Source: Macrostomum lignano (Eukaryota). From it: a stretch of DNA of 64,000 nt. The notes beneath the pieces are model-generated. The model was not told where the DNA came from and searched no databases. It saw only the letters and a list, made by a program, of their open reading frames with translations. A program made the translations under genes and the position numbers. Shown here piece by piece: positions 9,466 to 55,348 of this stretch; positions within the stretch are counted from its first letter, which is position 1; every line of letters starts with the position of its first letter. The stretch is from contig NIVC01000273.1 in assembly GCA_002269645.1 (NCBI GenBank), forward strand, positions 186,001 through 250,000, written 5' to 3'.

Positions 9466-9487
9466 GGTCATTTTTTTCTTTTTTTAA

Positions 9488-10198: not shown

Positions 10199-10200
10199 AA

Positions 10201-16842: not shown

Positions 16843-16843
16843 C

Positions 16844-16856
16844 TGGTGGCAGCGGT
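16844..16856 (+). promoter_or_regulatory. Primer-binding site complementary to the tRNA-Leu 3' end
   Basis: TGGTGGCAGCGGT, 1 nt after the LTR, is the reverse complement of ACCGCTGCCACCA, the 3' end of eukaryotic tRNA-Leu isoacceptors. Confidence 0.8.
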
Positions 16857-16862
16857 CTCAGT

Positions 16863-17657
16863 ATGGCCAAATCAGAGCAAGCAAGTTTATTGCCTCCAAA
16901 GTTCAGCGGCGACTCCAACGTGAGAATGTGGCTAAGCACGTTTGAGGACTTCGCCGACGACTGCGAATGGGACGACAAGAAGAAGGCAAAGAAGCTGAGA
17001 CTGCTGGTGACAGGAGAAGCGCAAATCTTCGTCTGGGAGCAGCCGGCAGACGTGTCAGCCAGCTATGAAAGGCTGAAGGAGAAGCTGATCGAGTGCTTCG
17101 GCAACAGTCTGAGCTGCTACAGAGCAATGGAGGAGTTTGAGGAGCGAAAGCGACAGCCCAACGAGTCGCTGAGGGAGCTCGCCTACAGCCTGAAGCTTCT
17201 CCACCTTCGGGCCCGCCCGGAATACTCTGTGGCGGCTCGGGAAAAGGACGTGAAGTTTCGTCTGATGCGCCTCCTGCCATCTGCCGTGAGAGATGCGCTG
17301 TTGAAGGACCAGGACGCGGACTCGTGTTCGCTGGCCGCCATCGTCGACAGAGCTGCGCAGCTTGAGCTGGTGAGCCACGCAACTACAGCCTCATCAGCCG
17401 CGGTGTCGGTAGAAGACAGACGGCTGAGCCAGCTGGAGCAGCAGATGCAGCAGCTGACAGCCAGCGTGCGAACGGGACCACCCGGAAGAGACAGGCGTCA
17501 GAAGGGACCCATTAAGTGCTTCAGCTGCGGCGAGCCGGGTCACATTGCTAGGCGGTGCCCAAAGGCGATCGGCAGCCGCTGCAGCCGGTGCTCAGGCAAG
17601 GGTCACTCCGCCGCGGTGTGCCCGACACCAACTGGTCAGCCGCAGGGAAACTTCTGA
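16863..17657 (+). CDS. gag: Gag with two CCHC zinc knuckles
   Basis: PPKFSGD..W capsid motif; CFSCGEPGHIARRC and CSRCSGKGHSAAVC. Confidence 0.95.
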   Translation: MAKSEQASLLPPKFSGDSNVRMWLSTFEDFADDCEWDDKKKAKKLRLLVTGEAQIFVWEQPADVSASYERLKEKLIECFGNSLSCYRAMEEFEERKRQPNESLRELAYSLKLLHLRARPEYSVAAREKDVKFRLMRLLPSAVRDALLKDQDADSCSLAAIVDRAAQLELVSHATTASSAAVSVEDRRLSQLEQQMQQLTASVRTGPPGRDRRQKGPIKCFSCGEPGHIARRCPKAIGSRCSRCSGKGHSAAVCPTPTGQPQGNF

Positions 17658-17687
17658 GGGTCGGCAGCCTGGGGCCAGCACCGACCC
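17645..17687 (+). promoter_or_regulatory. -1 programmed ribosomal frameshift signal (G GGA AAC plus downstream stem-loop)
   Basis: Heptamer at 17645-17651 is phased X XXY YYZ in the gag frame, and pol is in the -1 frame. A 6-nt spacer precedes the stem gggtcgg/ccgaccc (17658-17664 / 17681-17687). Confidence 0.85.
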
Positions 17688-20600
17688 GCTCAAAAGGGGC
17701 CCTCAGATCAGCGCCTTCAGTCTTCGTGAAGGTGCACTTTGGCAGCGTGTCAGCGCCTGCTCTGCTCGACACCGGCGCGCAAGTTTCGTTGATGGACAAG
17801 TCGCTGTTCGACAGACTGCAGTGCAAGATCGACTCCACCGACATCGGTGCGCTGCCGACGGCTGTCGACGGATCCCGGCTGCGCTGCCTTGGCCTGTCAG
17901 CAGCGGATGTTTCGATCGGCCAGACCATCCGCGTGCGCCATCGCTTCACAGTCGTGGACGGCATCCAGCCCAGCCTGATCATCGGCATGGACTTCATTGG
18001 CGAGGTGTCGCAGGCGATGACCATTGACATTAAAGAAGGCGTCGTCAGGTTCGACGGCACAGCTGTGCCTTTCAGCAGCGAGCCGGCTCGAGCAGATTGT
18101 CGCCTGGTGCCGAGTGTCCTGGTGGCGCGTGTGGCGGCAACTACGGAGCTGCCCGCCCGCAGCGAGAAGCTGGTGTGGCTCAAGGTGGATTCCAGCGGCG
18201 AGCAGGGAGTCTTTGAGCCGTCTGAGGACTTCGTGAAGTCCACTGCCGTCCTGCCGGGCCGCGTGCTGGCGGTCTCGGACGACTGCCGCATCCCGGTGAA
18301 AATGTGCAACCTTGCAGAGGAGCCCGTGCTGCTGTACGCCAACAAGGCGGTCGGCACGTTCGAAGGCGCGATGACAGACGGGGACGGTCGCCAGGAGGCG
18401 GCCCAGGAGAACCCCGTCGGTTGGAACATCAACGCGGAGCTGCCCGAACCGGATGCTGCGAGGCTGCGACAGCTGTTGGAGAGCAACGAGGACCTGTTCG
18501 CCAGGCACGAGTACGACCTGGGCACGACGGCGTTGCTTCAGCACCAAATCGAGCTGGAGCCGGGAGCGCGGCCACACCGGCAGGTCCAGCGCCGGCTGCC
18601 GCTGTCTGTGCGAGACCAGGTGGACAAGAAGATCGGTCAGATGCTGGAAAGCGGCATCATCGAACCGTCGACATCGCCATGGGCCAGCAACCTGCTGGTG
18701 GTCCGCAAGAAGAACGGCGACATCAGACTGTGCACGGACTGGCGGCAGCTCAACGCCTGCACGGTCAAGGATGCATACCCGCTGCCGCACCTGCAGCAGG
18801 CCATGGATGCGCTTGTCGGATGCTCCTGGTTCTCCACCATCGACTGCCGGCAGGGCTACCATTAGGTGGAGGTGGCGGAGGAGGACCGGTACAAGACGGC
18901 TTTCTATTCGACGCGCGGCCTGATGCAATTCTGCAAGATGGGCTTCGGGATGTGCAATGCCCCGGCGACGTTCCAGCGGCTCATGGAGCTGGTGATGTCC
19001 GGCCTGTCTTGGGAGTCCGTGCTGACTTATATCGACGACATCATTGTCTTCAGCAGGACGTTCGACGAGCACTTAGAGAGGCTGGCGGAAGTTTTTAAGC
19101 GGCTGCGAGACGCGGGACTCAAGCTGCACAAGGCCAAGAGCGCGTTCGGCCATCGCCGGGTGCTGTACCTGGGACACCTGATCAGCGAGCAGGGCATCGC
19201 ACCGGATCCCGGCAAGGTCGAGGCCATTCGCAGCATGCCCAGCCCAACGACGAACGAGGAGGTGAAGCGGTTTCTTGGAATGCTGGGTTTCTACCGCCGG
19301 TTCATCCCAGGCTTCAGCCAGACGGCGAGGGTCCTGCACGACGTCAGCGTGAAATCGAGGGACTTCGCGTGGAGCAGCGACTGCGAGCGAGCGTTCCGCG
19401 AGTTGAAGGACCGGCTGACGACAGCTCCGGTGCTGAGACTGCCAGATTTCACCAAGCAGTTTGTGCTCAGCTGCGACAGCAGTCAGTTCGCCGTCGGCGC
19501 GGTGCTCAGCCAGCTGCACGGTGACGCCGAGCTGCCTGTGGCGTTCGCCTCTCGCACCCTCAACAAGGCCGAGCGCAACTACTCGGCGACCGACCGCGAG
19601 CTGCTGGCGCTTGTCTGGAGTTTGAAGCACTTCAGGACGTACCTGCTGAGTGTTCCGAGCTTCAGAGTCTACTCGGACCACCGGCCACTGCAAGGTCTGC
19701 TGGCAACGAAGGACCCCGAAGGTCGGCTGGCGCGATGGCTTTCTACGCTGCAGCAGTTTTCGTTCGAGCTGCTGTACCGGCCTGGCATGGACAACGTCGT
19801 GCCGGATGCGCTGAGCCGGGTGGCCGGCACGCGCCTGCAGCCTCGGTGGGACGACAGCCGCCTGCACGAGGAGCAACTGCAAGATCCGCTGCTGAGCAAG
19901 GCGTTCCAGGCGCTGACCGAAGGGATTGACAGCCTGTCCGATTCATGGGCGGCGCAGGTTCGCGAGCTGCTGGACGAGGCCTCGGTGAGCTCGGCGGGAG
20001 TCCTGCTGGTCGGTGGCCGGCCAGTCATTCCCGGTCACCTGCGGCCACATTTCCTGCAGCAGGCGCACTCGTGTGACCAGAGCGGACACCTCGGCGTCGA
20101 CAAGACCGGAGCGAGATTGTCTGAGCGCTGCTGGTGGCCTGGTCTGCGACGGGACGTCGAGAACTGGGTGGCCAGCTGTGCGGTCTGCCTGGCCAAGAAG
20201 AGTCCAACCAAGCCGCAGAAGGCGCCGCTACAGTCGACGTGCCAGCCGACGGCTCCGTGGCAGCTGGTGCAGATCGACATCAAAGGGCCGCTTCCGCGTA
20301 CGACTGATGGCAAGGCGTACATCCTGAGCATGTGCGACGCCTTCTCCAAGTGGATGGAGACGGCAGCCCTGGCGGCGATCGACGCGGTTACGGTGGCGGA
20401 TGCGCTGCTCAAGTCGGTGGTTCTGCGTCACGGCGCTCCTCAGGTGCTGCACAGTGACCAGGGACGGCAATTCGAGAGCGAGGTGTTCGGCCGGCTCTGC
20501 GAGAAGCTGGGCGTCGAAAAGACGCGCACGTCGCCGTTTCATCCGAGCGGCAACGGAATCGTCGAGCGAGGCAACCGGACGCTCGGCGATATGCTGGCGA

Positions 20601-21361
20601 CGACGGTGGCCGAGAACCAGCAGGATTGGGACAGCAAGCTGCCATATGTGACCTGGGCCTACAACACCTCCGTGCACAGCACCATCGGCCTCAGTCCGTA
20701 CCAGGTCCTCCACGGCTGGCCACCGAGGCTGGATCTCGACAGCTGGCTGATAAGCGGCGACCGGCCGGCAGCCGACGGTGGACATCACGGCTTCCTGCGG
20801 CGGACTCAGGAGAACCTGCAGAGCGCCTTCGACACGGTGCACGGCCGACTGCGGAGCGCCCAGGCCGAGCGCAACCGGCTGGCCAACCAGGACTCTCGGT
20901 TTGTGCCGTTCGAAGAGGGCCAGCGCGTGATGCTGCGCAACTCCGTCGTCAAGCGCGGCCAGACGCGGTGTTTGAGCGCCAAGTGGAAGGGGCCGTACCG
21001 AGTCCTGAGGCGCCTGGGCGAGGTCAATTACCGCATCCAGGACGAGACCGGCCGCAGGCGCCGGCTGGTGGTGCACCACGACCGCCTCAAGTGCTTCGTG
21101 CAGCGGCGGGCGTCACTGGAGCTTCCGGCCGCAGCAGACCACCAGCCGCCGGCCGCCGACTTCGACAACGACGGCACCGTCGCTGAGCCGCCCGGGCAGG
21201 CGGCCGATCCTGGCGGCGACGCGGTGACCTTCTGGCCCGAGCTGCAGGCAGACGAGGCACCCGAGGAGCAGCCGGCGGCACCAGCCGAGCCGGTCACGGT
21301 TCCGCGGCGGTCGGCGAGAGAGCGGCGGCCACCTGACTTGTACATGGCGGGCTTTGCTTGA
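17645..21361 (+). pseudogene. pol: Pol (protease, RT, RNase H, integrase with GPY motif), one in-frame TAG at 18863-18865
   Basis: LLDTGA; SPWAS; RLCTDWRQLN; GYH*VEV; YIDD; CDSS..AVGAVL; H..GHLG..C..C; IDIKG / SDQG / ERGN; WKGPYRV. Confidence 0.95.
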
Positions 21362-21384
21362 CTCTGGAACTGTCTTTTGCTTCT

Positions 21385-21394
21385 AGGGGGAAAG
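21385..21394 (+). promoter_or_regulatory. Polypurine tract
   Basis: agggggaaag, 3 nt upstream of the 3' LTR. Confidence 0.85.
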
Positions 21395-21397
21395 TAG

Positions 21398-33142: not shown

Positions 33143-33427
33143 AGTAGTATGCAAAACAATGCTTCTAGACCCAGAGGCACCTATTAAACAGCACATTTGA
33201 AGGGCTAGAGGGGGGACACGGGGGGAAATCAAAAAAAGACTTTTAAATACTAAACAGCACAATTAAACACAATTAAACATCCCCAATAACCCATTTAATC
33301 AAAAACACTATTAACACACCCAATCAAATCCACACATCAGAAATCAAACCCCCATGTCCCCCCTCTAGCCCTTCAAATCCATTGTTTCAATAGGATCTGA
33401 TCTAGAAGCGTTGTTTTGCATACTACT
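33143..33427. mobile_element. About 285-bp miniature element with ~80-bp imperfect TIR starting AGTAGTATGC
   Basis: agtagtatgcaaaacaatgcttctaga..gaagggctagagggggaca vs tgtccccctctagcccttc..tctagaagcgttgttttgcatactact. No clear TSD. Confidence 0.8.
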
Positions 33428-34441
33428 ACATTCAAACACACACTAACACTCACAAACACACCGCCAGCGCCGCAGGCGCAAAGGGTCTTTTTCTGTTACT
33501 AAAAATGAACCGAGTTTACACCTTTTCTATTAGTGATACTTTTGAGACTGTTGCTAAAAATTCAGAGATTATAAAACACCATATTTTGAATGGAATAATT
33601 GATGAAGTTTATTTAAAATACGATGACAAAACAGAACTAAAACTTTATCCACTTGAGTTGGATGGTTATCCACTTGAGTCAGAAGAAAACTTCTCCCTAT
33701 TAAATTGTCCAGCAACCTTGTTATATTCTCCTATCCATTTTTTACAATGTTTTAAATCCCCACTACAAAAAACTCCTTGATAAGACTATCGAGATCGGAT
33801 TCGAATGATGCGATTGCTGCTTCGATACAGGATTCTAAAATGTAGGGCATTATAACTATTTAGTATCAAATCAACATAAATAAAAAACGTATTTCTAACC
33901 TAATCTTACCTTTCAAAACTAAAACGGGTCTTTATCAACACACCTAAGCGACTTCTTACATGCGCACTGAGTCATGAAAATAGAAAAAAGGCGACAATGG
34001 CCGCTGCTTTAGAGTTGGGGTATAAGAGGTGCTCAATTCCTGCTGCAGCATGCTGAAATTCAAAACCGAATGATAAATGAACAATAAATTCTTATTGAGT
34101 CAACTGGTAACCACTTGCATTCTATACCAACTCTACGATCCATACTCCGTTCCTGCCGGACCATAAGTGCTACATTTCCGAGAAAAGACCTTGCCCCAAA
34201 CGCTAGGGCGCACACAGCGAAATGTGCACCCCCCGCCCCGCCACATTAATCGATTAAAATCCAATTCTCATCAACCAGCCGCACACAACTTTTACCCCCC
34301 ACCCCCACCCCTCGCCACGACTTGAGGGTTTGAACAGATACAAACTCCTAGACGCAGGCGCTAAAAACGGCGTCAAGTCGGATTCTCGAGTGAATAGTCT
34401 GGCAAGTTTATTAGTTCACAGAGTCTCGTATAACCATCTTA

Positions 34442-34822
34442 ATGGCGAACCGACTACAAAAAATAGTGGCTGTGTTTATTAAACAGGCCCAAGCCGCCCA
34501 AAACAACGCGGAAACTACCCGACAACTTTCGGCAGTTGTCAGACAATTATCCGAGAATTCCCATTACTCCCAAGAAGAGCTCCGAAATCGTATAGCCGTC
34601 CAGGCATACAATAATACCCAAATGTTTATCGCAATCGGAGAAAGCGTCAACAAACTAATCAACCTAGCAAGTGCGCAACTGGTGGCCCTGAAGGTCGTTT
34701 TTCTAATTATTTTTCTGTTCCTGGTGCTCGCTTTGCTTCACCACTGCTACAAACGCATCCGCTCTCCCGAGTCCCGCCGTCCGAATGTCTTCCGTAGCCA
34801 AGAGTATTCTCAAGCCACTTAG
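34442..34822 (+). CDS. Hypothetical coiled-coil protein with a C-terminal transmembrane helix
   Basis: ATG in good context; LVALKVVFLIIFLFLVLALL hydrophobic stretch followed by a basic tail. Confidence 0.5.
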   Translation: MANRLQKIVAVFIKQAQAAQNNAETTRQLSAVVRQLSENSHYSQEELRNRIAVQAYNNTQMFIAIGESVNKLINLASAQLVALKVVFLIIFLFLVLALLHHCYKRIRSPESRRPNVFRSQEYSQAT

Positions 34823-37800
34823 ACGTAAGTAAATTCTAATCATTATCCGAAACATGGCCCCAACTACCGAAGCATCCCGCTCTTATTTGCAGAGTCAGCA
34901 CCGAAACACCTTCACCCGGACCGAACCCAAACCGCCGTGCTGCCCCAACATGGACCTCAACACCACACTCACCGTCCATGCCGACCTTTCCACTGTCGTC
35001 CACGGCCGTTTTAATCGACTGAATCCACCATTAAGTGTACTCGCCTACCTGCTAATAAACATTATTATGCTGTATTGTTAAACTTCTCGAAACGTCTACA
35101 ATTTTAGGACCAGGATAGTATTTTTCATTTCTACGTAGTACAGATTAGAACCAGGGGACCGTCACTAGGCTTCAATATTTTACCCATAGAACTCAAAACC
35201 TCGATACCAACCACTCATATTCGTACTTATACTTTTTCGCATATTTTCTGTTACTTTTCATCCGTCTCCGCGGCATCTACACATATGCATATCTTCCACT
35301 TTTGTTTACCTTATCCGCCCTCTCGATTGAGCGCCGGCTTTAGTAGCTACTTCAACCAACATCGAATCCGTGCATTTTAGCACTACAAGTTTTAATACAT
35401 TCATTGTCAAACCGGTATATTTTTGTATTAAAAGTTTTTAACAAGTAAATAAAAGATGACACAACAAGACAGAGACACCCCGCTGGCAAGCCCTTACATC
35501 GAACGATGGCCTTGGATCTACGCCACACTGTATTTACATGTACGATACTGCACACAGAGCGAATCCAAAAGAATAAATATACACATATGTTCAAGCCTTC
35601 ACTAAATAAAAGTCGCATACGAGATATTTACAAATACAATTCCCCTACAGTCCACATAAAACAAGCCGACGGCGGCGACGGAGCCAACCCACACGCCGAG
35701 TCCCGAATGCCTACGACAGGTCCGCATCCTGAAACCAAGGAAGATGACATACATTTACCAGGTCAATTTACTAAGCTGCAATCAATATAAAATTCACTAA
35801 CCGTACCACCATCAGGGAATCAACTTCCGGATGGCGGCTTCGGAATCTAAAATTTGATTGTATAAATAACTCTTTGTTGTAACACAAACTCTACCACCAT
35901 AGACTTGCATATTTCACCCTAAACCACTACCAGCCTGTCCCCCAACCCGATATGACTGTGTACACCCTACAAAGAAGAGCATGTTCTTCTACGTAACACC
36001 AACCGTGGAAGGTTGCGGCGGTCCAGGAGTCCGCCCCCGTCCGAACACGAAATTTGTCTGCAATAAAAAAAAAAGATTTCAACTGTTTTACACCCTCAAG
36101 TTTTAATCAATGCCAAGCAGTCTTGAATGCGTGGCAGCATAAAGTAGAACTGGTTCATGCATTAACGGACCCGTCTCACACTAAATAACATGAACTCAAC
36201 TACCATAAAACCTCGTAACTCCATCTTAAACCGGCACGTGAAGAGCACCTCCCAAATCTAGCTACTTATGTACATCCCGCCAAAATAAAGAGCATGGTTT
36301 TCGATGTATCACTAACCGGGACACATGGCTGCGGTGGTCCGGGAGCTCGCCCTTCTCCGATCGCGCAATTCGCCTAAAATGTCAAATAAGATTCCAGCCT
36401 TTATATCTTCAATGTTTAATCAATGCCAAGCGACTACTGACCATTGTAAGCTGTGTTGGGCTGGACGAAACACACGCAGCCTGGAATATGCAACAGCAGA
36501 AAATAGAACTGGGCTACAATATTGAACTGGGATCACATTCAATTAAAATACAATATCCATACCTCGTTTCGAGTCCCACGACCACGTCCGCGAATCTACG
36601 ATTCAAGAATAAAAAACAGACAAAAAAAATATTTTCATACGGACGAGTGAATTATACCCACACCAAAAAGCTCATCTCCACTCACCATGGCTAAAAACTC
36701 CTAAAATGAGAATGGAAATTCTTTACTTATTAATGCAATATGTGATAAGAAAAGCATACGAATATTGTCTCGTACCTCCCTTCCCTGAGCCACCATCTCC
36801 GGCACCACTTCATGCATTCGCGCAAAAACTGTCGTCGCCCACTGGTGCTGCAAAAGTACTCGGTCACTCGTGCATAGTTGCTAAAAAAGACAAAATGAAC
36901 TCGTCAAGTACAAGATCAGGCACTACTAACTAAAAAACAATCTTACATCGTAACCCGCTTCACGATAGCGAACTTCGGGTCACTCCTCACATAGCTCCTC
37001 CAAAGCTGCCGTCCTTGCGTTGAAGTAATCCTACCAGTAGATGAAGGTATAGTAAGTTATACTACCACAAAGCAATCGAACTCAGAATGCATATTACATA
37101 CCTCTGTCCGTGGTGGGAACGTATTCCTCCCTATAGTAATTTCCCCGTCATAGGGATCCTCGCGGCCCCGCACACTAGGCGGAACTACCGCGACCGGACG
37201 GAGGTCTCGCCGACCGTCTACTGAAGTCGGTATATGATGCCCTGTCAAAATAAGGTGCAATACAAGAGGAGTGGCAGCCATAAAAACTATACTTACCAGA
37301 CGGTCTACTTAAGGGCGACACTCGTCGGAGTCGATCGCTACCGTAGTCCACGAAAGCGAATTTACCTTCCAACTCTTCAAAGTACCCCTCCTGCGCCTTC
37401 CAATACTCTTCCGGCGATCCGTCCTGAGCCTCGGCCATTGTCAATCGCAATCTATCGTTCGAACAGTTCCAAGTCTCCTCTCTAACTCAATGACCTAGAT
37501 CTCCCCTTCATATGAAACTCAATCCACGCGGGGATTGCACAATTTCCGTTATCGGCATATAGCATATAGCATATAGCATAAATTCCAACAATATTGAAAA
37601 GAATGACAAGGACACCGAACGAGTGAAGAGTTTAAGAGTGGTGATCAGTCACTCAAAAACTCCCACTTCTAGACACTGGGGAACAAGTGCCTAGGTATTT
37701 GCAAATTCAAATAACTCTTACTGGAGCGGATCCTCTCGTAGTTGCAGACGTCTGGGTCTTGTGGTGTTTAGTGCTGTCTGGCTTGGTTGAGCGGTAGTGG

Positions 37801-38134
37801 GGGCCGGTTTCGGTGAACGACTGTGATCTTCTGGAGTACTTGACTCCTATCTGTGGGTCGACCAAAACGAGAGCGAATCAGAATTCTTGACGGTCCTCGA
37901 GCTCGGAATTACCAATAACACGTGCGCCCTAATGAACAATTGAACATTTAATTCTCTAGGTTTCTGTAATAGGTCTTCATCGTTACGTCCGAAACGTAAC
38001 GGATAACTGAATTCATATCAATAATCCTCTAGGAATATTTCCTAGGAAACAAAGGAAGCCTTTCTCAAATTTATCGACAACGAACTGCTATCTTATTACT
38101 CAATTAATCCACTTATTAACGCCCCTATGAAAAA

Positions 38135-38893
38135 TTGGCCCGAATTTTCACCCTTCTCTTCACCCGAAATCGTCAGCACTTTGTGGCTCTCGCTAGACAA
38201 GTCGAAAGAGGCATCGCTATCAAACTAAAGCAAATGGGCGATCCGATGCCGCTGCTTCGCATCTCCCGCGCCACCGAGGAAGGCGACCTGGACTTTGCCC
38301 AGTGGATTGCCATAAAACCTACTCTACCATGTTTCACCTTTCGAGCACTGCCTAATCTACACCCGCGTAAAGTTGACACAAGCGAGCTGAGGGGACTTAG
38401 CGGTCTTTTCCATCTCTCCGTTCAGCTCACAAGTCTTTATCGTCAGAAGGAAAGCAAGACATGGCGCCTCGGCCTCGCCCTTCGCTCGCTGACACTGGTC
38501 GACGACGACCCGAAACACCTGCCGATGCTAGCCCAAGCTTTGCGGTTTCGCATCCCAACTACGTCGACTCCAATCGCCGCCACCGCCGCAACTGAGGAAG
38601 AAGAGTCAACAACTACGACGACGCTAGTGCAACCAGTTAGCGGACGAAAACGACGACAAGGCCCAACTCGTCGCAGCCCCGCCAAACGCCCCACCAAGAC
38701 GACTGGAGCAGCAGCAGCAGCAGCTGAGGACTGGATCACGGCGACTCCCGTCAAAGATCTTGTAAGCGGTGTTACCAATACTGTCCCCAAAGCGAGTAAA
38801 GCTGCAGCCTCCAACCCAGCGCTAGGGGACGTGGACTCGGGGGCCTCGACGGAGCCCATGGACAGCGAAGATGATGAAGTCTCCGCACAGTGA
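38135..38893 (+). CDS. Hypothetical protein with NLS-like basic patch and disordered C-terminus
   Basis: 252-codon ORF with GRKRRQGPTRRSPAKRP; AATAAA at 38902-38907 just after the stop. Start codon uncertain. Confidence 0.55.
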   Translation: MARIFTLLFTRNRQHFVALARQVERGIAIKLKQMGDPMPLLRISRATEEGDLDFAQWIAIKPTLPCFTFRALPNLHPRKVDTSELRGLSGLFHLSVQLTSLYRQKESKTWRLGLALRSLTLVDDDPKHLPMLAQALRFRIPTTSTPIAATAATEEEESTTTTTLVQPVSGRKRRQGPTRRSPAKRPTKTTGAAAAAAEDWITATPVKDLVSGVTNTVPKASKAAASNPALGDVDSGASTEPMDSEDDEVSAQ

Positions 38894-39120
38894 GGGTCTA
38901 CAATAAAGCTTTTTTCTTTGAAGTCTAGGTTTTTCATGGTAGTATCATAGGCTTCATAGCAGAACTAAGGCAACTGGCAAACCGTTGGCGTTCACTTGGT
39001 GGCGGGAAGCTATACCTATAACTCTAACTACCATTCTCCGTAAACGGAAACGCATCACCCAGAAATATATAAAAATCTTAACCGTTATACTAAATTTTTT
39101 CTGGTATTTATTCTTTTCAG

Positions 39121-40500
39121 AGATGGGTCCTACTAATAGTGCAAGCCAGAACGAGTACCCCTCCGGGAGAAAAGTTAGATTTAAAAAGGCTAAAAAACGT
39201 CTAGGCCAGGCGGGAATCCCTCCAAATTATACACCGCCAAGCCAAGTATGCTTCGTATCGGACTGCCCCAATTTTCATGTCAGTTCTACCCCGGAGGACT
39301 ACTCACGCTTTATGGCTGTAGATCCCGAGTCCAACTTATACGTGCCCTGAATTTCATACACCTTAAAGTAATTAAACTAATCAAAACATCGATTCGTATA
39401 ATCAGCTCTACAACCGTTGGTCTGCTCCACTATCCTGGACTCAAATTTTCGACCCTGAAAAACTTTATCGGGCCTTTTCACACAGCTCGGCTGTATTACG
39501 ACGCAGAGATATTCCCACAAGCTATCACCCTCCGTAGTACTGTTCCACTCAATAGGACGGTGTGCAATATTTTTCATTCCCTTAAGATCGTTATAATGGG
39601 TGCAAAGACTACTAGCCAGATTTTAGAAATGATCAACATTGTTAAACAATTGTGTCAGGAAGCCGCTCCGAAACCAGAATTTGTTCCGATTCTAGCCAAT
39701 ATGACGAGCCAGTCTCGCATTTTTCTCCTGGAGGGCGTAATCGGTGCCGGGAAGTCGACGTTGCTTCGAAAACTGGCTCTCACCTCCCGCCTCGAGGGTT
39801 GGGCTGACAAAGCCGTCTTCGGTCCCGAGCCTGTTCACCAGTACGCGCGATACCCGCTCCTCCCGGACTCGGTAAATCTGCTTCAGTCATTCTATCGAGG
39901 CGAGCTTCCGGCCGTCGCATTCCAACAGCACGTCTCCCACGACTTGTTCGACAGAGACAGCAAAGTAAGTGGTACTATAATATCTAGAAATTCCTTTCGT
40001 ATAGCTCCTACTACATGTACAACCAATGTCGAAAGACAACACGGTATAGGTACTTTTGCCAACCTTTTGTTATCACCCAGGTCCGGAATGAGGTTAACCA
40101 ACAACCCAACAACAAGGTGGTTATCCTCGACCGCTGCCTCGGGTCGGCTCGAGCATTCCAAGACGTACTACACCGTCAAGGCTCGCTGTCTGACGCCGAA
40201 TGGGTGATTGCTCAGCGCCAACTAGCCGTCCTCGAAGCGACTGAGGTACCCTTTACCGGCGCGAACATGACTCTTATTTACCTGCGCATTGACCCGGAGT
40301 TGGCCATTCAACGCATCGCCCAGCGCGGACGCAGCGGTGAGGAGACTGGCATCTCCCTGGACTATCTACGATCGCTAGACGAGGCGTTTACACGCCACTA
40401 CCAGGACTACTCGAACGTACACGAAATTCTAATCAGATCGGATACATCTACGACCGATCTAGCCCATCTTGTTGGCGGCACCATTCGTCGTGAGCTCTGA
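39121..40500 (+). CDS. TBP-like (two repeats) / deoxynucleoside kinase fusion, spliced; 1-nt frameshift in the A6 run at 39192-39197
   Basis: KLDLK, then LYTAKPSMLRIGLPQFSCQFYPGGLLTLYGCRS, then YDAEIFPQ..IFHSLKIVIMGAK (TBP pattern). Followed by LEGVIGAGKST, EPV, FQ, DR and IYLR..QRIAQRGR..E (dNK). The intron 39965-40080 joins RDSK to VRNEV. Confidence 0.75.
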
Positions 40501-40889
40501 CATGCACTTGATATTAACAACAACGATTTTCTGCTGTAGTAATAAACACCTAAATTCAATCGAGTCCCTACCAAGTTGAAAAAAACACCACCTACCACTA
40601 CTACCTGAAGGTAAAATTCCCATGCGTACCCAACGATTTTTTGTTTATCATGATGATCCATTCAAACTGCTGCAGATCCCTAAAGACACTACCATTGACT
40701 AAGTTATACGATCCTATTCTTTCAACCACCATCGACGACCTACTACTTACCAGCCTGCTGTTCATTCCTAAATATTCAAATTGTCTACATAATTGTATCT
40801 CTGCAAAGTAAAATACAGTTTAAACACGCGGCGGAGGACATTTTCAGACTGTCCCACCAAACTTAAGGCTGTGCATTCCTTCCTTATTT

Positions 40890-43317
40890 TTGCCACCGAG
40901 CAAACTATTTAGGCGATTATCACAACCACCCCATCGCCAACAATCGCCAACAACATTCCAGCCGCCGTCGACGAAACAAATCAGATGCCCCGTGTGCCGT
41001 CAGAGATTCAACAGTCAAGCCGCCCTCCATGGGCACTCGCACAATGGCTCGTGCTATCAACCAGACCAACTTTTACTTCGAGAACTAGTGCGTCGGCTTA
41101 TCGAAGAGGACACTCCACCAGGCTGGTCGGTACAACATACCGAGTCCGCACACCGAGGTCGGGCGAATTTTCTGACGTTCACGCCACTGCTGGACGAGGA
41201 AGATGACGAGACCGAACCACCCAGCGAGTTACTTCCAAAACTGCAAGTTCCACTTTTCCGTCTTTTTAACTCTCTCGGATCTGCGGACTGTTTACTCCGT
41301 ACATGTATACATCTTAATGTAAAAATGTATCGTACTCGTTATCCCCCCGCCAATGACACTGCTGCTGGTGAATCCCCCCACAACGAAGAGGTAGAAGTAA
41401 TCGCGCCCTTCTTCAATTCCAAAGTCGTTATGGCCTCCTTTGATGCGAATGCTCCAGCCGCCGGCCGCTGTGTACTTCTTCTCTCTGAGGACGTTTTCAA
41501 CCAATGGTACAGCGAGGCAACAAACGATCTGGTAGCTAAATTAGACAACTTTCAGTCCCGAGGTAGCAACTGGAAGTTCCTCACCGTTGTCAAGGTCGAC
41601 GTTATGCTGTGCATATTCCGCCGAAAATATTTACTACTACAGTCGAGCAGCAGCAGTCGTCGGCAGCAGCAGCAGGACGTGTGGGGAGCGGGGCGGTGGT
41701 GGGGGCGGCGGGCGTGGCGGCGGCGGCGGCGGGCGCACAGGCGGGCGGCGGTCCAACAGAATCCGCTCCGATCCGTTCCGTTCCATTCCGCGTTCCACTG
41801 GCTGTTGGTCGTATGCCGGGAGCGGTTTTGTTTCTACGCCCGCACCGAGCAGATCAGTATGATTGTTTTATGTATGCTGTCGTGTCGAGCGTCTTTTCCT
41901 CACAGGTCGAAGGGCAAGCCCGTAAAAGGCGAAAGGCGTCTTACAGGCCTTGGCTGAAAAGCTTTCGATTTACGCGCGCCGGAGTGACTCGTCACTCAAT
42001 TGGGAGCTACAGAAAGTTTTGCCGGCTGAACCCTCGAATTAGACTGATGTGGCCTTTGTGTGGCCTTTCGTTTGGTTGTCGATCCGGATTTGGATAGTGT
42101 AACGAGGGAGGATATGTTGCGCAGATACAATACTCCCTGCAAGTTGTTTTATTCTACGCCTGGTACAACAGATTGTATTGGCAGGTTTCTCTTGGCTCTG
42201 TGCGAGCTTGCATTCGAAGTAACTAATGCGACTAGCAAGATGACTTATAGACCAATGCTTAGAAAGTATCTAGGTCAGCGTCCTAGCGCAGATCGATGCT
42301 ACGTCTGTCTCGCGAGTTTTCCGCTGACGAGTCTCAAGTCTGGGATCATTGTCATTTGAGTGGTCTTCCACGTGGAATGGCCTGCATGTCGTGCAATCGA
42401 AAACTTGCCCTGCAGCGCTATCGAATTATCGTCTACCTGCACAATCTTCGAGGATATGACGGTAAAATAATTGTTCGTGAGGTGTACAATGTGTTTGGTG
42501 GAGAAGACGACGTTCAACTGCACGTTCTGCCCGAGTCGAGGGAACGGTTTAAGACGTTTTCATTAAAGTTCAAGGTACCGCTGGCTGGCAGTCAACGGCC
42601 GCAGCAACAAAAGCAGAACAAGAAGAATTTTGTTTGGTTTGAAATCTGCTTCAAGGACACGTTTGCGTACTTGTCGACAAGTCTAGCTAGTCTGGCTTAC
42701 CGTTTGACGCAGGAACAGTTGGTACACTGTCGGGATTTGCTGAATTTTTATCCTAAACTCCAACTGTCTACTCTGCAGCAGAAGGGAGTGTTTCCGTATT
42801 GTTACTTGGACTCTGAAGAAAAGTTGGACAGTGTGACTGAACTGCCATCGCGAGATTTGTTTTACGACGCAATGACCCGGCAAGAGTGTTCTAAGGAGGA
42901 GTACACACGCGCTCAGCAGAGTTGGCAAGAGTTTGATTGTGCCAATTTGCGTGACTATCTGACTGCGTATTTACTGTTGGATGTACTACTGTTATGCGAC
43001 GTATTTGAGAGTTTTCGTCGGACTGCAATTCGAGAATACGGTTTGGATGTGTGTCATTTTCTCTGATCGCCAATGTATGGTCTGGTTGCGTGTCTGTTGA
43101 AGGTGAAGAAGCCGATCGAGTTGTTTACAGACGCTCGTATGTACTCCGAGGTTGAAGCTTCGATTCGAGGTGGGTTCAGTTTCGGCACTCGCCATCTTAC
43201 TACGGCAAATAATCCATTGGTAGAAGAATGCCGTCGGCAGCTGGATGACGACGACGACGATTTAAGAGAACTACGGCGGAATGCACCGTATGGCACTCAC
43301 TTGGCCTACCTTGATGC
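40890..43317 (+). pseudogene. polB: Protein-primed PolB of lineage C (Maverick type), fragmented and truncated at motif A
   Basis: C2H2 CPVC..H..H; FQSRGSNW; CFMYAV; DHCHLSG..RGMAC..CN; Exo II HNLRGYD; KGVFPY; Exo III YLLLDV; SIRGG; ends YLDA. Several frameshifts, including a 10-bp tgtggccttt duplication near 42047. Confidence 0.85.
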
Positions 43318-43528
43318 TACGAGGGGTGTCCCAAAAGTTCCCGGAATGTCTAACGTAGCTCTTCAACGAAGCCATGATGTTTCACGCCCTTGGTGTCAAA
43401 TGAAAGGAAGTTTTGTCACGAAGAAAATGAAGTTAAAAGCATGTTGATATCTGTTTTTATTCAGGAGCTGCACATGGGATTACGCGAGGAGGGCCAATTG
43501 AGTTCGAGATTGTACCGGCTGGAGATTT
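43318..43528 (+). mobile_element. Possible Tc1/mariner-type transposon end truncating polB
   Basis: TA-CGAGGGGTGTCCCAAAAGT occurs exactly at the polB break. No matching second TIR was found. Confidence 0.4.
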
Positions 43529-44669
43529 GTATGTCGACTTACAAGAAGTATGTCGACTTACAAGAAGTCTAACTGTTGGAATCCGAGTAGTAGACGAGAG
43601 TGGAGGGGCTGTGGATGCTGCGAAAAACTATGTCTGTCTGAATAACATGGTGGTGAGTACGCTGTTCGAAGACGTGCAATTGCGGATTGGAGATACGGTC
43701 GTTGAAGGCGGGAGCTTCATGTATCCGTACAAGGCCATGCTTTTGACGCTTTTGGAGTATGGTCGGCTGGGACAAGACGGCGGGTTGGCTGCCTGGGGAT
43801 TTTACAAGGACACTGCTGGAAAAATGAATGCCACCGGCGTCGCGAACGTTGGGCGAGTGAAGCGACAGGCACTAATTGCGGGTGGGAGAACTTGTACGGT
43901 TTCATGGCCTTTGTTTTTGGATCTATTTCGTCAGCCACGGTATTTGTTGTCAAAGACGCCTTTGCGGATAAAGTTACTACCGGCAAAGAGCAAATTCGTG
44001 TTAAGTGCCGCACAGATTGGAGGCAGTGTTAAAGGATAACGAGGTTGAGATTCAGAGTGCGGAGCTCCGTTTGCGGTATGTTCAGCCATCTGCCAGTGTG
44101 ATTGGAGCCCATGCACATGGTTTGAAGACCTATAATGCCTTGTATCCTCATCGCAGTTTATCATTGGGTACGTTCACAATACTGCAAGGGTCGTTAAGCC
44201 ATACGCACGAAAATCTGTTTCCGACGCTGGTGGTAGTCGTTGAAAATACTGCATTTAATGGAAGTCTGGCGACAAATCCGTTCAATTTCGTGCATGCGAA
44301 TTTGATCAGCGTTGGAGTTTACGTAAATGGTGAGGCGGTACCGACGCGGCCTAGTCAATTCGACTTCACAGGGGATTGTGCAAAGGAGTATACAACTCTG
44401 CGTCAACAACTGGGTTTGTATTTCCAAGGACGGGATTTGGGGTTCTCGATGGCGGACTACAACGGAGGGTATACGATACTCGCGTATTCGTTAGGATCTG
44501 ACGGGGGAGTTGCGCCGGCGGTACAATTGTATAAGGAAAAGAATGTCCGACTGGAGATGCGTTTTGGAACGGCTACAGCGGAGGTCTATGACGTTATTTT
44601 CGGTGGTGTTTTCGACAAGCAGCTACAGATTACCGAACTGTGGGACGTTGTCCCAGAAACCGCTTGGAA

Positions 44670-44673: not shown

Positions 44674-46662
<1,989 letters not shown>

Positions 46663-54072: not shown

Positions 54073-55348
54073 AATTTTGACAAATATCCAGAAAAAATTC
54101 TGGATTTCCAAAAACACATTGAGTGTATATGACTACTATCATTGAATAAAAAGCTTCTATTGTGCTTCAGCGGGGCAGGTCATTGTGCCATCGGGCGCAG
54201 CCCGCGAACCATAGGTTCATTTTTGGATAGGGAATCTTTTGTATTTGCGTCTTCTTTATTCTCTATACAAAAAGAGTAAGAAAAAGAGCTATAAAATAAA
54301 ATCACTCGAGATGCATTTATACTCGCCTTTTTAGTGTCTGCAGCTTCATTTTTCTGTTACTAAAAATAGACAAAAATGACACACATAACACAAGCACGTT
54401 ATACGTTCGTTCTATGGCCTCATAACCAAATACCCAGCTCTGCAGGCAACTGGCTACGCTTTTGAAACGCTGCTCTTTGAAAGGTGGCCATTGAAAAGTT
54501 TGCGTCCGAAGATCCAAACTATGACTGCAGGATAACGGCGCCTATTACCATTCGATTCGAAGGAGAAGACGATGACGAAGACACCCTACTTGCTGAAAGC
54601 ATGTCGGGCATTTCTACGAATACTATGAGGGAGTAGTTTTTAATAGCTAACTTAAAAACATTGAATGGACAATAAGCACTAGCCACTTTTTATAGTTTGT
54701 AATTTTTTAATGTTCAGAATAATGATATAAAATACACAATCTTTATGTCTACCCTATTCTTTTGTGCCTCCAGTCGTCTCTTTTTCTATTCAATATTACT
54801 AAAAATAGACAAAAATGGCACACTATACACAATAATACAATTTGAATGAATTGCAAGTAGGAGACCCAGTAGAGTATCGTGGAGAAAATGGGTGGTAGTT
54901 TTGTTATAGCTGACTGAATATCTAAAGCGTTTCCTAGAAATAATGGTTTACTGAAGACCACTTTATATATAAAAAATTACTATTGTAAAATTGGATGACA
55001 CTTTCAAATTTTATATACCTGAAATTGCATTGAATTGACCCGTGAATCCAATTTTTCTCATGGTTTTACTCACGAAATCGTGAAAATTGCATTTTTCAAA
55101 ATTTTTGAAAATCACAAAAAATCGCTGTTTTCAGACCATTTTCACCTGTCATTTTTACTTATTTTTAGGGATTTTCAAAATGAGTGAGGGCATGAGGGCG
55201 AGGGCATCCCAGTAGGGCACTCCAGTACCCCAGTGGTTTTTACCGACTTTATTTAATCCTACAACTGCAAAACACGCCATTATTCCTTATATTATTCATT
55301 TTTAAGAGTCTTACAGCATTATGGGATTTGCAGAGCGTTTTTTCATAA

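What the first reader, a model, noticed from the sequence alone, without database searches (positions are those of the whole stretch)
39121..40500. TATA-binding-protein-like domain pair fused to a deoxynucleoside kinase, next to a Maverick pPolB
Two repeats follow the TBP pattern: KLDLK..Y.AK..MLRI..P....FYPGGLLTLYGCRS (cf. KLDLK..YNPKRF..MRI.EP....IFSSGKMVCTGAKS) and YDAEIFP..IFHSLKIVIMGAK (cf. YEPELFP..IFVSGKVVLTGAK). Aromatic residues are retained at three of the four intercalating-Phe positions. Most of repeat 1, all of repeat 2 and the kinase P-loop share one ORF, so the fusion does not depend on the frameshift fix. TBP-like genes are known from large DNA viruses; I do not know of one in a Polinton, or of a TBP-dNK fusion. 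It could couple promoter or origin binding to local dNTP supply, or act as a TBP decoy. The TATA-like cassettes elsewhere in the window are possible targets.
Basis: partly seen in the sequence, partly recalled or inferred. Interest (0 to 1): 0.9.

Follow-up and report, generated by a model that had tools for sequence, protein, structure and literature searches.

The report
Virus-like element's TBP gene merged with kinase
A decayed copy of a Maverick/Polinton virus-like element in the flatworm Macrostomum lignano carries a real but very divergent TATA-binding-protein gene that in this lineage runs in frame into the neighbouring deoxynucleoside kinase gene; related elements keep the two genes separate, so the fusion looks like a recent side-effect and not a designed bifunctional protein.

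Summary
Window 39121-40500 (+) encodes a two-repeat TBP homologue. Pfam TBP scores above its cut-off, all 35 PDB profile hits are TBP (best 3.7e-8), and the top 44 Foldseek hits are TBP. It runs in frame into a deoxynucleoside kinase (dNK) that has one canonical 116-nt intron, upstream of an Endonuclease-VII/protein-primed PolB.

The DNA is Macrostomum lignano. This copy is decayed: two frameshifts in the TBP part and a truncated polymerase. A 96%-identical copy (L002) has one open 459-codon ORF.

New context:
- TBP-like genes recur beside the pPolB in related elements.
- Four diverged relatives have TBP-like (own stop), then dNK (own ATG), then pPolB.
- A second M. lignano lineage has TBP-like but no dNK.
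- A beach-sand metagenome Polinton has a more canonical TBP.

The fusion is therefore lineage-specific. The dNK keeps its own splice acceptor and AUG, and the public gene model starts there. A conserved acceptor, with no in-frame ATG in four of six lineages, precedes the TBP core. The host spliced leader ends in AUG and would be in frame (inference).

Most likely role: an element-encoded core-promoter (or origin) DNA-bending factor next to a dNTP-salvage enzyme. Verdict: a new variant of a known kind, moderately interesting.

The parts
38135..38893 (+). Upstream conserved ORF of the element. It is the homologue of gene g1 of transcriptional unit Mlig012932, has an acidic C-terminal tail and no known domain.
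   Evidence: It is 97% identical to L002:8569-9282. Homologous ORFs precede the TBP-like gene in L005 and L008. No Pfam hit.
39066..39074 (+). TATATAAAA motif 46 nt upstream of the acceptor. It could be a TATA box or a UAUAAA-type poly(A) signal of the upstream gene.
   Evidence: It is the only such motif in the element and is conserved in L002. A/T-rich hexamers lie 45-90 nt upstream in the relatives. Its function is not determined.
39111..39120 (+). Polypyrimidine tract plus CAG, a putative 3' splice (cis or spliced-leader trans) acceptor in phase 0, immediately before the first strand of TBP repeat 1.
   Evidence: A YAG lies at the same codon position in all six lineages. In L008 it is TAG, which is a stop if read as coding. 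There is no in-frame ATG between the nearest stop and the core in 4 of 6 lineages. The M. lignano spliced leader ends in ATG (PMC8629364). Use of the site is inferred, not shown.
39121..40500 (+). TBP-like-dNK gene of this copy. It is broken by two single-base frameshifts relative to the intact copy L002 and contains one ordinary intron.
   Evidence: L002:9425-10804 is one open 459-codon ORF. Window versus L002 alignment. tblastn of the L002 ORF covers the window region in three frames.
39121..39667 (+). TBP-like core domain, two repeats (repeat 1 about 39121-39379, repeat 2 about 39380-39667).
   Evidence: Pfam PF00352 27.3 bits, above GA 22.9. PDB profile search 35/35 TBP hits. Foldseek top 44 PDB hits are TBP. 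BFVD top hits are giant-virus TBP-like proteins. Coordinates.
39668..39700 (+). Eleven-codon linker, a former intergenic spacer. It contains a retained polypyrimidine-AG acceptor (39690-39695) just before the kinase's own AUG and has no poly(A) signal.
   Evidence: The P0002 CDS begins 2 nt after the equivalent AG in L002.
39701..40500 (+). Deoxynucleoside kinase: exon 1 39701-39964 (P-loop 39734-39760), intron 39965-40080 (GTAAGT...CAG), exon 2 40081-40500 (DRC motif 40123-40152, Arg-rich lid 40312-40344, stop included).
   Evidence: Pfam dNK. P0002 splice. Intron ends and length. Alignment to Drosophila dNK 1j90_A. Coordinates.
40541..40546 (+). AATAAA, 41 nt after the kinase stop. Probable poly(A) signal of the TBP-like/dNK cistron(s).
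   Evidence: It is also present in L002.
40890..43319 (+). N-terminal zinc-finger region + Endonuclease VII + protein-primed DNA polymerase B gene, broken and truncated in this copy. Relative to L002 it has one internal deletion of about 0.5 kb and a 3' truncation (only residues 109-531 of the 992-aa L002 ORF product are represented). The retained polymerase part has at least one frameshift and one in-frame stop. The N-terminal region has 15 further non-triplet indels.
43488..44637 (+). Homologue of the roughly 440-aa capsid-sized protein of related Polintons (L009 gene u8, L010 gene v6). It is joined directly to the truncated polymerase, so the dUTPase, packaging ATPase and integrase present in L001/L002/L008 are missing from this copy.
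   Evidence: tblastn 36-38% identity, E 1e-58. Rearrangement relative to L001. No Pfam hit, so the double-jelly-roll fold is not verified.
44741..46584 (+). Fragments of the protease-sized gene that follows the capsid gene in related elements. They are interrupted by an unrelated RNase H ORF on the minus strand (45370-46305).

Best explanation
The window holds a decayed copy of a Maverick/Polinton (adintovirus-like) element of Macrostomum lignano.

The element's early/replication gene block reads: conserved ORF, then a divergent element-encoded TBP paralogue, then a deoxynucleoside kinase, then Endonuclease-VII/protein-primed PolB, then dUTPase.

The TBP-like gene is an old, conserved passenger of this clade of elements and always sits next to the polymerase. 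The kinase is an optional neighbour.

In the window's lineage the TBP-like cistron lost its stop and 3'-end signals. It now reads through an 11-codon former spacer into the kinase, giving a single TBP-like-dNK ORF that is intact in sister copy L002. The kinase keeps its own acceptor and AUG, so it can still be made alone.

Inferred mechanism:
- The saddle-shaped domain binds and bends A/T-rich DNA through its retained aromatic pairs and nucleates host RNA-polymerase pre-initiation complexes on element promoters.
- The kinase and dUTPase tune the dNTP pool for protein-primed replication.
- The gene block is probably expressed as a polycistronic unit resolved by host spliced-leader trans-splicing, with the leader's terminal AUG supplying the TBP-like start codon.

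Shown here: homology, gene order, fusion in frame, the intron, and decay of this copy. Inferred: DNA binding, the role in transcription, the existence of the fusion protein, and leader-donated initiation.
For: Organism and copies:
- P0001/P0002 are M. lignano proteins at 92% and 85% identity.
- L001 and L002, from GCA_002269645.1, are 95-97% identical to the window.

TBP homology.

Aromatic residues sit at all four kink positions. Three are invariant across the family and the first is Tyr or Phe (with PMC3142196).

dNK motifs are intact against Drosophila dNK.

L002 has a single 459-codon ORF. The intron carries a non-triplet length difference between copies while the exons stay in frame.

Conserved synteny at 33-43% protein identity:
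- L003, L004, L005 and L006 have TBP-like, then dNK. L003 and L004 go on into an Endonuclease_7-bearing pPolB N-terminal region.
- L008 has TBP-like and then pPolB, without a kinase.
- L009 has a TBP gene next to pPolB, plus rve.

The elements are true Mavericks. IVa2-like ATPase, rve integrase and capsid-sized and protease-sized genes were found by tblastn.

Other members of the pPolB clade carry different transcription-related genes: VLTF3 in L013 and PC4 in L010. This fits a transcriptional role for such accessory genes.

Expression architecture:
- Conserved phase-0 YAG before the core, and missing ATGs.
- The spliced leader ends in ATG, and about 15% of M. lignano genes lie in operons (PMC8629364).
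- AATAAA follows stops and acceptors precede ATGs in the relatives.
- Gene ids Mlig012932g2 and g3 sit on one contig.
Against: - There is no transcript, protein or binding evidence for the TBP-like part. Neither public gene model includes it: P0002 starts after it and P0001 splices across it.
- The two AlphaFold2 models rest on only 4 sequences. They reproduce the repeat folds but not a convincing saddle (TM 0.27-0.49).
- The Asn of the first strand of each canonical repeat (visible in the E. cuniculi row) is replaced in this family, so TATA specificity is doubtful.
- dN/dS between the window and L002 is 0.32 for the TBP part and 0.53 overall, from only 21 substitutions. That is not distinguishable from neutrality.
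- The family is tiny. Four relatives turned up among 1.84 billion representatives, and none in IMG/VR or JGI metagenomes.
- Position next to the replication genes fits a replication role as well as a transcription role.
Confidence: 0.6

Rival explanations
1. Two proteins, not one. The in-frame junction is a neutral or recent accident. The pre-mRNA is trans-spliced at the retained acceptor just before the kinase AUG, so the only stable product of this stretch is a stand-alone 227-aa kinase. The TBP-like cistron, left without a stop codon or poly(A) signal, is silent or degenerating in this lineage.
For: - Relatives keep separate genes.
- The sister lineage lacks the kinase.
- The P0002 model begins 2 nt after the AG acceptor and is flagged partial.
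- The kinase's ancestral AUG and its context are retained; compare L005.
- Two of three copies have a damaged TBP part: the window by frameshifts and L001 by a 5' truncation.
- There are no fused relatives anywhere.
Against: - L002 keeps 459 codons open, including about 180 TBP-like codons with every family-invariant residue.
- The few substitutions in the TBP part lean synonymous.
- An mRNA that starts at the upstream acceptor and escapes internal trans-splicing would necessarily encode the fusion.
Confidence: 0.35
2. The TBP-like domain is a replication factor, not a transcription factor. It would bend A/T-rich DNA at the element's termini or origin to help protein-primed initiation by the adjacent polymerase. 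This is analogous to the DNA-bending accessory proteins of other protein-primed replicons (general knowledge, not tested here). The kinase and dUTPase would complete a replication module.
For: - The gene is invariably adjacent to the pPolB in every lineage found.
- Its neighbours are nucleotide-metabolism genes.
- The loss of the canonical first-strand Asn residues suggests a specificity other than TATA.
Against: - No terminal repeats or origin-like A/T-rich repeats were found in the window's element.
- Every characterised TBP relative acts in transcription initiation (PMC3142196).
- The acidic residue of the second stirrup motif is invariant in the family. From memory, it contacts TFIIB in cellular TBP.
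Confidence: 0.2
3. TBP decoy. The protein does not bind DNA productively but sequesters host TBP partners (TFIIA, TFIIB, NC2, Mot1) to skew host transcription, as reported for TLF/TRF2 sequestering TFIIA.
For: - TLF/TRF2 cannot bind TATA yet binds TFIIA and TFIIB and can repress by sequestration (PMC3142196).
- This family is as divergent from TBP (about 20% identity) as a decoy could afford to be.
Against: All four DNA-kinking positions stay aromatic and three are invariant. A pure decoy has no need of that.
Confidence: 0.08
4. Chance resemblance or non-coding DNA: there is no TBP domain.
For: Only that public gene models skip the region and that identity to TBP is about 20%.
Against: - Pfam scores above the curated cut-off in five independent sequences.
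- 35/35 PDB profile hits are TBP.
- 44/44 top Foldseek hits are TBP.
- Relatives at 33-42% identity conserve the ORF in other elements.
Confidence: 0.01

Closest known systems
Cellular TATA-binding protein core (Pfam PF00352; e.g. PDB 4wzs_D, 1c9b_B, 1mp9_A)
   Same: - Two tandem repeats of about 90 aa with the strand/helix order of TBP.
- The alignment spans both repeats.
- Aromatic residues sit at all four DNA-kinking positions.
- The glycine/lysine-rich strand motifs and the acidic stirrup residue of repeat 2 are kept.
   Different: - About 20% identity.
- Tyr replaces Phe at both repeat-1 positions.
- The first-strand Asn of each repeat is replaced.
- There is no N-terminal low-complexity domain.
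- It is encoded by a mobile virus-like element.
- In this lineage it has no stop before a kinase.
TBP-like proteins of giant viruses (Nucleocytoviricota): Moumouvirus TBP-like M1PH61, Heterosigma akashiwo virus putative TBP, asfarvirus B263R homologues
   Same: They are virus-encoded, highly divergent TBPs and are the best BFVD structural matches. B263R likewise keeps only part of the Phe set (PMC5825884).
   Different: Those viruses carry their own RNA polymerase and mostly transcribe in the cytoplasm. Mavericks encode no RNA polymerase (none was seen in L001, L002, L008 or L009), so this factor would have to work with host polymerases or in replication.
TBP genes of Polinton-class (MELD) viruses: the gene labelled 'TBP' in Fig. 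5 of Starrett et al. 2021 (PMC8502044), and the TBP of metagenomic Polinton L009
   Same: The element class is the same (adintovirus-like pPolB plus rve integrase), and the TBP gene lies beside the polymerase in L009.
   Different: - Those genes are stand-alone. L009's is more canonical (52.5 bits versus 27-34) and sits on the opposite strand.
- There is no kinase neighbour.
- The animal (flatworm) lineage and its synteny are, as far as the searched literature shows, undescribed.
TBP-like factor TLF/TRF2 (TBPL1) of bilaterians
   Same: It is a divergent TBP paralogue used for a specialised promoter set.
   Different: TLF cannot bind TATA boxes (PMC3142196), whereas this family keeps aromatic residues at the kink positions. 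This family is not orthologous: its best hits are TBPs, and the relatives it groups with all lie in Maverick-type gene neighbourhoods.
Multisubstrate deoxynucleoside kinase (Drosophila dNK, PDB 1j90; dCK/dGK family, Pfam PF01712) and the nucleoside kinases of large DNA viruses
   Same: It has the P-loop, the EPV / FQ / Y substrate-site residues, the D-R-x motif and the Arg-rich lid. These align to Drosophila dNK at E 7e-10.
   Different: It is carried by a 15-20 kb Maverick. The literature search returned no paper that mentions dNK or thymidine kinase together with these elements. In this lineage it is preceded in frame by a TBP-like domain.

Membership tests
TATA-binding protein family (Pfam PF00352) | Sequence profile match above the curated threshold | tested here: met
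   Window ORF 27.3 bits, L002 29.9, P0003 33.8, P0004 30.8, P0005 28.6, against GA 22.9. PDB profile search: 35/35 hits are TBP.
TATA-binding protein family (Pfam PF00352) | Two tandem repeats forming one core | tested here: met
   L002 residues 13-173 align to TBP residues spanning both repeats. In the window copy repeat 1 is interrupted by two frameshifts.
TATA-binding protein family (Pfam PF00352) | Saddle-shaped fold (ten-stranded sheet under four helices) | tested here: inconclusive
   Secondary-structure order fits and all top Foldseek hits are TBP. However, TM is only 0.27-0.49 and the models rest on a 4-sequence alignment.
TATA-binding protein family (Pfam PF00352) | Two pairs of intercalating phenylalanines (human F193/F210, F284/F301; PMC3142196) | tested here: inconclusive
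   The positions hold Tyr, Tyr, Phe, Phe. All are aromatic and three are invariant in the family. Whether Tyr can substitute was not tested.
TATA-binding protein family (Pfam PF00352) | Binds and bends TATA-box DNA; recruits TFIIA/TFIIB | not testable with these tools
   No binding data exist. The first-strand Asn residues are replaced.
Deoxynucleoside kinase family (Pfam PF01712) | Profile match, P-loop, D/E-R-x motif, Arg-rich lid | tested here: met
   P0002 scores 90.9 bits. The window exons score 19.1 and 63.4 bits separately. The motifs align to Drosophila dNK.
Deoxynucleoside kinase family (Pfam PF01712) | Phosphorylates deoxynucleosides | not testable with these tools
   Inferred from conserved catalytic residues only.
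Maverick/Polinton (adintovirus-like) element | [quoted passage not shown] | tested here: met
   PF03175 + PF02945 in the window (truncated), L001, L002 and L008. Relatives in bivalve, beetle, wasp and ant genomes.
Maverick/Polinton (adintovirus-like) element | Retrovirus-like (rve) integrase | tested here: met
   Present in sister copies L001 (about 20.0-20.8 kb) and L008 (18.0-19.1 kb) by tblastn with the rve genes of L009 and L010. Absent from the window's deleted copy.
Maverick/Polinton (adintovirus-like) element | Packaging ATPase, double-jelly-roll capsid proteins, maturation protease | tested here: inconclusive
   IVa2-like ATPase homologue in L001, L002, L008 and L011. Capsid-sized and protease-sized homologues in the window, L001 and L008. 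No Pfam capsid or protease hit, and the folds were not modelled.
Maverick/Polinton (adintovirus-like) element | Terminal inverted repeats and target-site duplication | tested here: not met
   No long inverted repeats flank 33-48 kb. This copy is rearranged, and the ends of intact copies were not recovered.
Spliced-leader-resolved operon of M. lignano | Downstream cistrons begin at a YAG acceptor that receives the 35-nt leader; upstream cistrons end at a poly(A) signal about 100 nt before it | tested here: inconclusive
   The sequence architecture fits (PMC8629364).

The most novel reading that the evidence does not exclude
A clade of animal Mavericks carries its own TBP and has adapted its early genes to the host's spliced-leader machinery. 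The gene block would be a trans-spliced operon, and the host leader's terminal AUG would serve as the start codon of the viral TBP. In M. lignano a read-through product would physically link a DNA-bending promoter/origin-binding domain to a deoxynucleoside kinase, placing dNTP production at the template.
Probability: 0.2. Interest if true: 0.75.

Novelty: new variant of a known kind. Interest (0 to 1): 0.55.

Why it matters
How Mavericks/Polintons get their genes transcribed is largely unknown. They are nuclear, encode no RNA polymerase, and are often treated as transposons.

A conserved, element-encoded TBP paralogue next to the polymerase gene suggests that some lineages bring their own core-promoter (or origin) recognition factor. 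Giant viruses do this, but these elements would be doing it in a nuclear, host-polymerase context.

The flatworm copies add two testable ideas:
- Neighbouring accessory genes can fuse by stop loss without losing independent expression.
- A virus-like element may rely on host spliced-leader trans-splicing, even for a start codon.

M. lignano has a genome, transcriptomes with leader-tagged reads, and transgenesis, so the expression questions can be answered from existing data. The TBP-dNK fusion itself is lineage-specific and unproven as a protein, and the window's copy is dead. The finding is interesting but not revolutionary.

Tried and rejected
- Scans for the TBP-like family in IMG/VR viral contigs and in JGI metagenome contigs found pattern matches but no relative.
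- Word-indexed protein searches returned only two M. lignano models and three of the four relatives. The family is very small.
- P0007 and P0008 from the exhaustive search are low-complexity repeat proteins, not relatives.
- AlphaFold2 of the complete relative P0004 gave pLDDT 74 but no assembled saddle. Its Foldseek TBP hits have TM 0.27 and polo-box noise. I do not use it as evidence for the saddle.
- dN/dS between the window and L002 rests on 8 synonymous and 13 non-synonymous changes and is inconclusive. L001 and L002 differ at 2 of 1105 sites and are uninformative.
- I looked for a second TBP-like gene beside the window's other pPolB (22986-24854, minus strand) and in the mollusc and metagenomic relatives L010-L013, using tblastn and a local family HMM. 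None was found.
- There are no TATA 'cassettes': one TATATAAAA lies in the element and five in the whole window against about 1 expected, the others as two inverted pairs outside the element.
- No terminal inverted repeats were found.
- Literature searches for the SRA and BioSample identifiers of the relatives found nothing, so their hosts stay unknown.
- No Rfam family is present in the window.
- I rejected the P0001 (UniRef A0A1I8H2Q6) gene model as a guide. It joins the upstream ORF, the kinase and the polymerase N-terminus and skips the TBP-like region. Yet the upstream ORF's sequence continues to be conserved past the model's donor in L005 and L008.
Full report
**1. What the window is**

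The 319-aa ORF at 39248-40207 finds two Macrostomum lignano proteins at 92% and 85% identity. One of them (P0002, BOX15_Mlig012932g2) lies on two contigs of assembly GCA_002269645.1. Those loci, L001 and L002, are 95-97% identical in DNA to the window: L002 over window 34109-43319, and L001 from 39387 onwards with rearrangements. The window is therefore flatworm nuclear DNA, and the finding lies in one of several copies of a repeated element.

**2. The observation**

- ORF 39248-40207 hits Pfam TBP (24.2 bits; 27.3 bits for the open stretch 39194-39679; cut-off 22.9) and the P-loop end of Pfam dNK.
- ORF 40015-40500 hits the rest of dNK at 63 bits.
It is GTAAGT...CAG and 116 nt in the window. 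The copy L002 has 117 nt there, so in L002 the intron happens to be readable in frame. The NCBI model P0002 removes it.
- A length difference that is not a multiple of three inside the intron, with exons that stay in register, is what a real intron predicts.

**3. Is the TBP similarity real?**

Yes.
- L002 contains one open ORF of 459 codons (9425-10804) with both repeats, the linker and the kinase.
- Its first 181 residues, searched against all PDB sequences, hit 30 sequences, all TBP. The alignments run from the first helix of repeat 1 to the last helix of repeat 2.
- An exhaustive HMMER search of 1.84 billion representative proteins with the window's own open stretch found four true relatives, P0003-P0006. 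They are 33-38% identical and 143-257 aa long, with E 9e-21 to 5e-11.
- A profile of these plus the two M. lignano sequences (A1) hits 35 PDB sequences, all TBP, best 3.7e-8. It includes a full-length alignment to Encephalitozoon TBP at 5.6e-8.
- The relatives score 22.8-33.8 bits on Pfam TBP.
- An AlphaFold2 model of the window's stretch has pLDDT 75 on a 4-sequence alignment and the strand/helix order of TBP repeats. Its 44 best Foldseek matches in the PDB are all TBP (prob 1.00, E about 1e-4), though TM is only about 0.45.
- Against predicted viral structures, the best matches are the TBP-like proteins of giant viruses.
- A model of the complete relative P0004 did not assemble a saddle. The global fold is therefore supported by homology and not by modelling.

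**4. DNA-contact residues**

PMC3142196 names the kinking residues of human TBP as F193/F210 and F284/F301. In the alignment the corresponding Encephalitozoon phenylalanines have the same 17/91/17 spacing. They face Tyr, Tyr, Phe, Phe in the M. lignano protein. Across the family the first position is Tyr or Phe and the other three are invariant. The Asn of the first strand of each canonical repeat is not kept. From memory, these Asn residues read the central base pairs, so specificity for a classical TATA box is doubtful.

**5. The kinase**

P0002 aligns to Drosophila multisubstrate dNK (E 7e-10) and to dCK/dGK. It has the P-loop, the EPV, FQ and Y substrate-site residues, a D-R-C version of the E-R-S motif, and the Arg-rich lid. 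It looks catalytically intact.

**6. State of the window's copy (counts only)**

- Relative to L002, the TBP-like-dNK gene carries two single-base frameshifts, both in the TBP-like part.
- The polymerase gene has one internal deletion of about 0.5 kb and a 3' truncation, so only residues 109-531 of the 992-residue L002 ORF product are represented.
- The retained polymerase part has at least one frameshift and one in-frame stop. The N-terminal region has 15 further non-triplet indels.
- The truncated polymerase abuts a capsid-sized gene and protease-sized fragments. The dUTPase, packaging ATPase and integrase seen in L001, L002 and L008 are missing.
- L001 has lost repeat 1 through a rearrangement.
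- Of three copies of this lineage, only L002 has the whole ORF open.

**7. The element**

- Downstream of the kinase lies a long gene with a C2H2-like finger, Endonuclease VII and DNA_pol_B_2, followed by dUTPase.
- tblastn with genes of two metagenomic relatives finds an IVa2-like packaging ATPase, an rve integrase, a capsid-sized protein of about 440 aa and a protease-sized protein in the M. lignano copies.
- The polymerase's relatives are uncharacterised 'DNA-directed DNA polymerase' genes in bivalve, beetle, wasp and ant genomes.
- This is a Maverick/Polinton of the adintovirus-like kind. Terminal repeats were not recovered.

**8. Comparative context: the main new result**

All four relatives of the TBP-like protein sit in the same neighbourhood.
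- In L003/L004 (two SRA runs) the order is TBP-like (own stop), then dNK (own ATG, 250 nt downstream), then a long ORF with Endonuclease VII.
- In L006 the kinase ATG is 48 nt after the TBP-like stop.
- In L005 the two genes are about 35 nt apart and are preceded by a homologue of the window's upstream ORF.
- L007 is too short to tell.
- The kinases are 37-43% identical to the M. lignano kinase, much like the TBP-like proteins. The pair has therefore diverged together.
- A second M. lignano lineage (L008, polymerase 59% identical) has upstream ORF, then TBP-like (own stop), then polymerase, with no kinase at all.
- A 14.7-kb beach-sand metagenome contig (L009) with pPolB and rve carries a more canonical TBP (Pfam 52.5 bits) next to the polymerase on the other strand.
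- Other members of the polymerase clade lack it and carry VLTF3 or PC4 instead.

The TBP-like gene is thus a recurrent, old accessory of this clade. The kinase is an optional neighbour. The single ORF is peculiar to the window/L001/L002 lineage.

**9. How the junction looks**

- The 11 codons between the last TBP helix and the kinase's Met contain a polypyrimidine-AG acceptor 5 nt before that Met and no poly(A) signal.
- The relatives have an acceptor 16-20 nt before the kinase ATG, and L003 has an AATAAA after the TBP-like stop.
- The NCBI model P0002, flagged partial, begins 2 nt after the AG. This is what a leader-trimmed trans-spliced transcript with an upstream-open frame would produce.
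- The kinase is therefore probably still made alone.
- The TBP-like cistron has no stop of its own, so it can only be completed by reading into the kinase. Whether that protein exists is unknown.

**10. The start of the TBP-like ORF**

- In all six lineages a pyrimidine tract ending in YAG lies directly before the first strand of repeat 1, in phase 0.
- In L008 the triplet is TAG.
- In four lineages there is no in-frame ATG between the nearest stop and the core.
- The M. lignano spliced leader ends in ...ATG, about 30% of its genes are trans-spliced and 15% lie in operons, with a modal spacing of about 100 bp (PMC8629364).
- A leader joined at this acceptor would supply an in-frame AUG in every lineage.
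- This is an inference from sequence alone. An upstream cis exon is the alternative.
- It would explain why annotation pipelines miss the gene.

**11. Function**

Most likely (about 0.5 within the homology-based frame), the domain is an element-specific core-promoter factor that bends A/T-rich DNA and recruits host polymerase machinery.

In favour:
- all known TBP relatives act in initiation;
- the aromatic residues are retained;
- the stirrup Glu is invariant;
- sister elements carry other transcription factors.

A replication-origin bending role (about 0.2) fits the constant adjacency to the polymerase and nucleotide-metabolism genes. A decoy role is less likely because the kink residues are conserved. 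The kinase and dUTPase plausibly raise and clean the dNTP pool for protein-primed synthesis.

**12. Known or new?**

- Virus-encoded TBPs are well known in giant viruses (PMC5825884).
- A 'TBP' gene is already drawn in a MELD virus with adintovirus-like PolB (PMC8502044).
- I found no paper that links TBP or a nucleoside kinase to animal Mavericks, flatworm Mavericks, or a TBP-kinase fusion.

Verdict: a new variant of a known kind, interest 0.55.

**13. Limits**

- No read-level expression data, no proteomics and no eukaryotic genome collection were available.
- The hosts of the relatives are unknown.
- The structural models rest on four sequences.
- I did not build any frame-corrected or spliced version of the window's gene. 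The intact natural copy L002 and database proteins were used instead.

Noticed in passing
window 1-22993 (+): A second, A/T-rich (about 37% GC) Polinton/PLV-like element with densely packed ORFs. It holds rve integrase (6198-7244), a double-jelly-roll-like capsid domain (8872-9465), a Pox_A32-like ATPase (9488-10198), an F5/8 type C lectin domain (12160-13539), HIRAN (13680-14315), and a PriCT_2 primase C-terminal domain (15475-16716) with DUF5906 (22064-22993). It uses a primase-helicase type replicase, unlike the element in the finding.
   Followed up: partly
window about 16800-21400 (+): A GC-rich (about 60%) insertion encoding a Ty3/gypsy-type pol (RT, RNase H, integrase zinc-binding domain, rve, p58 C-terminal; ORF 18866-21361). 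It apparently splits the primase-helicase gene of the left-hand element.
   Followed up: partly
window 22971-25109 (-) and 27764-28207 (-): A third virus-like piece. It is another Endonuclease-VII + pPolB gene, 30% identical to the L002 polymerase over residues 427-985, plus a second small Endonuclease_7 ORF. Neither tblastn nor a family HMM detects a TBP-like gene beside it.
   Followed up: partly
L002 9411-9424; L008, L006, L003, L005, L007; window 39111-39120: A polypyrimidine-YAG lies in phase 0 immediately before the TBP core in six diverged lineages. No in-frame ATG is present in four of them, and in L008 the triplet is a TAG. With the host leader ending in AUG, this suggests a leader-donated start codon for a virus-like element's gene.
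   Followed up: partly
L002 8191-15544 (gene ids Mlig012932 g2, g3): The kinase and polymerase share one transcriptional-unit number in the public annotation. AATAAA signals follow stops and acceptors precede ATGs. The element's early genes may be expressed as a trans-spliced operon.
   Followed up: partly
P0001 (UniRef A0A1I8H2Q6_9PLAT): This is a chimeric public gene model. It joins the upstream ORF, part of the kinase and the polymerase N-terminal region, and it treats the whole TBP-like domain as an intron.
   Followed up: yes
L010 (ENA ERZ23499014) and L013 (ENA ERZ25073755): Related Polintons carry other host-interaction or transcription genes. L010 has PC4, NADAR, a chromodomain integrase and a weak Bcl-2 hit. 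L013 has Pox_VLTF3 and Pox_A32. Accessory transcription factors seem interchangeable in this clade.
   Followed up: no
window 45370-46305 (-): An RNase H (PF00075) ORF of 311 aa is inserted between the two protease-like fragments of the element. It is probably part of another mobile element.
   Followed up: no
window 26869-26884 and 54966-55017: There are two inverted pairs of TATATAAAA outside the element. Five matches occur in the window against about 1 expected. The first pair overlaps to form a short palindrome.
   Followed up: no
window 38892-38980: A stretch of about 89 bp lies between the upstream ORF's stop and the TBP-like gene. It is absent from L002 and contains an AATAAA at 38902.
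   Followed up: no
window 33143-33427: Nested inverted repeats (27 nt at 96% and 39 nt at 87% complementary) lie just upstream of where similarity to L002 begins (34109). They could be a small foldback/MITE-like element or an element boundary.
   Followed up: no
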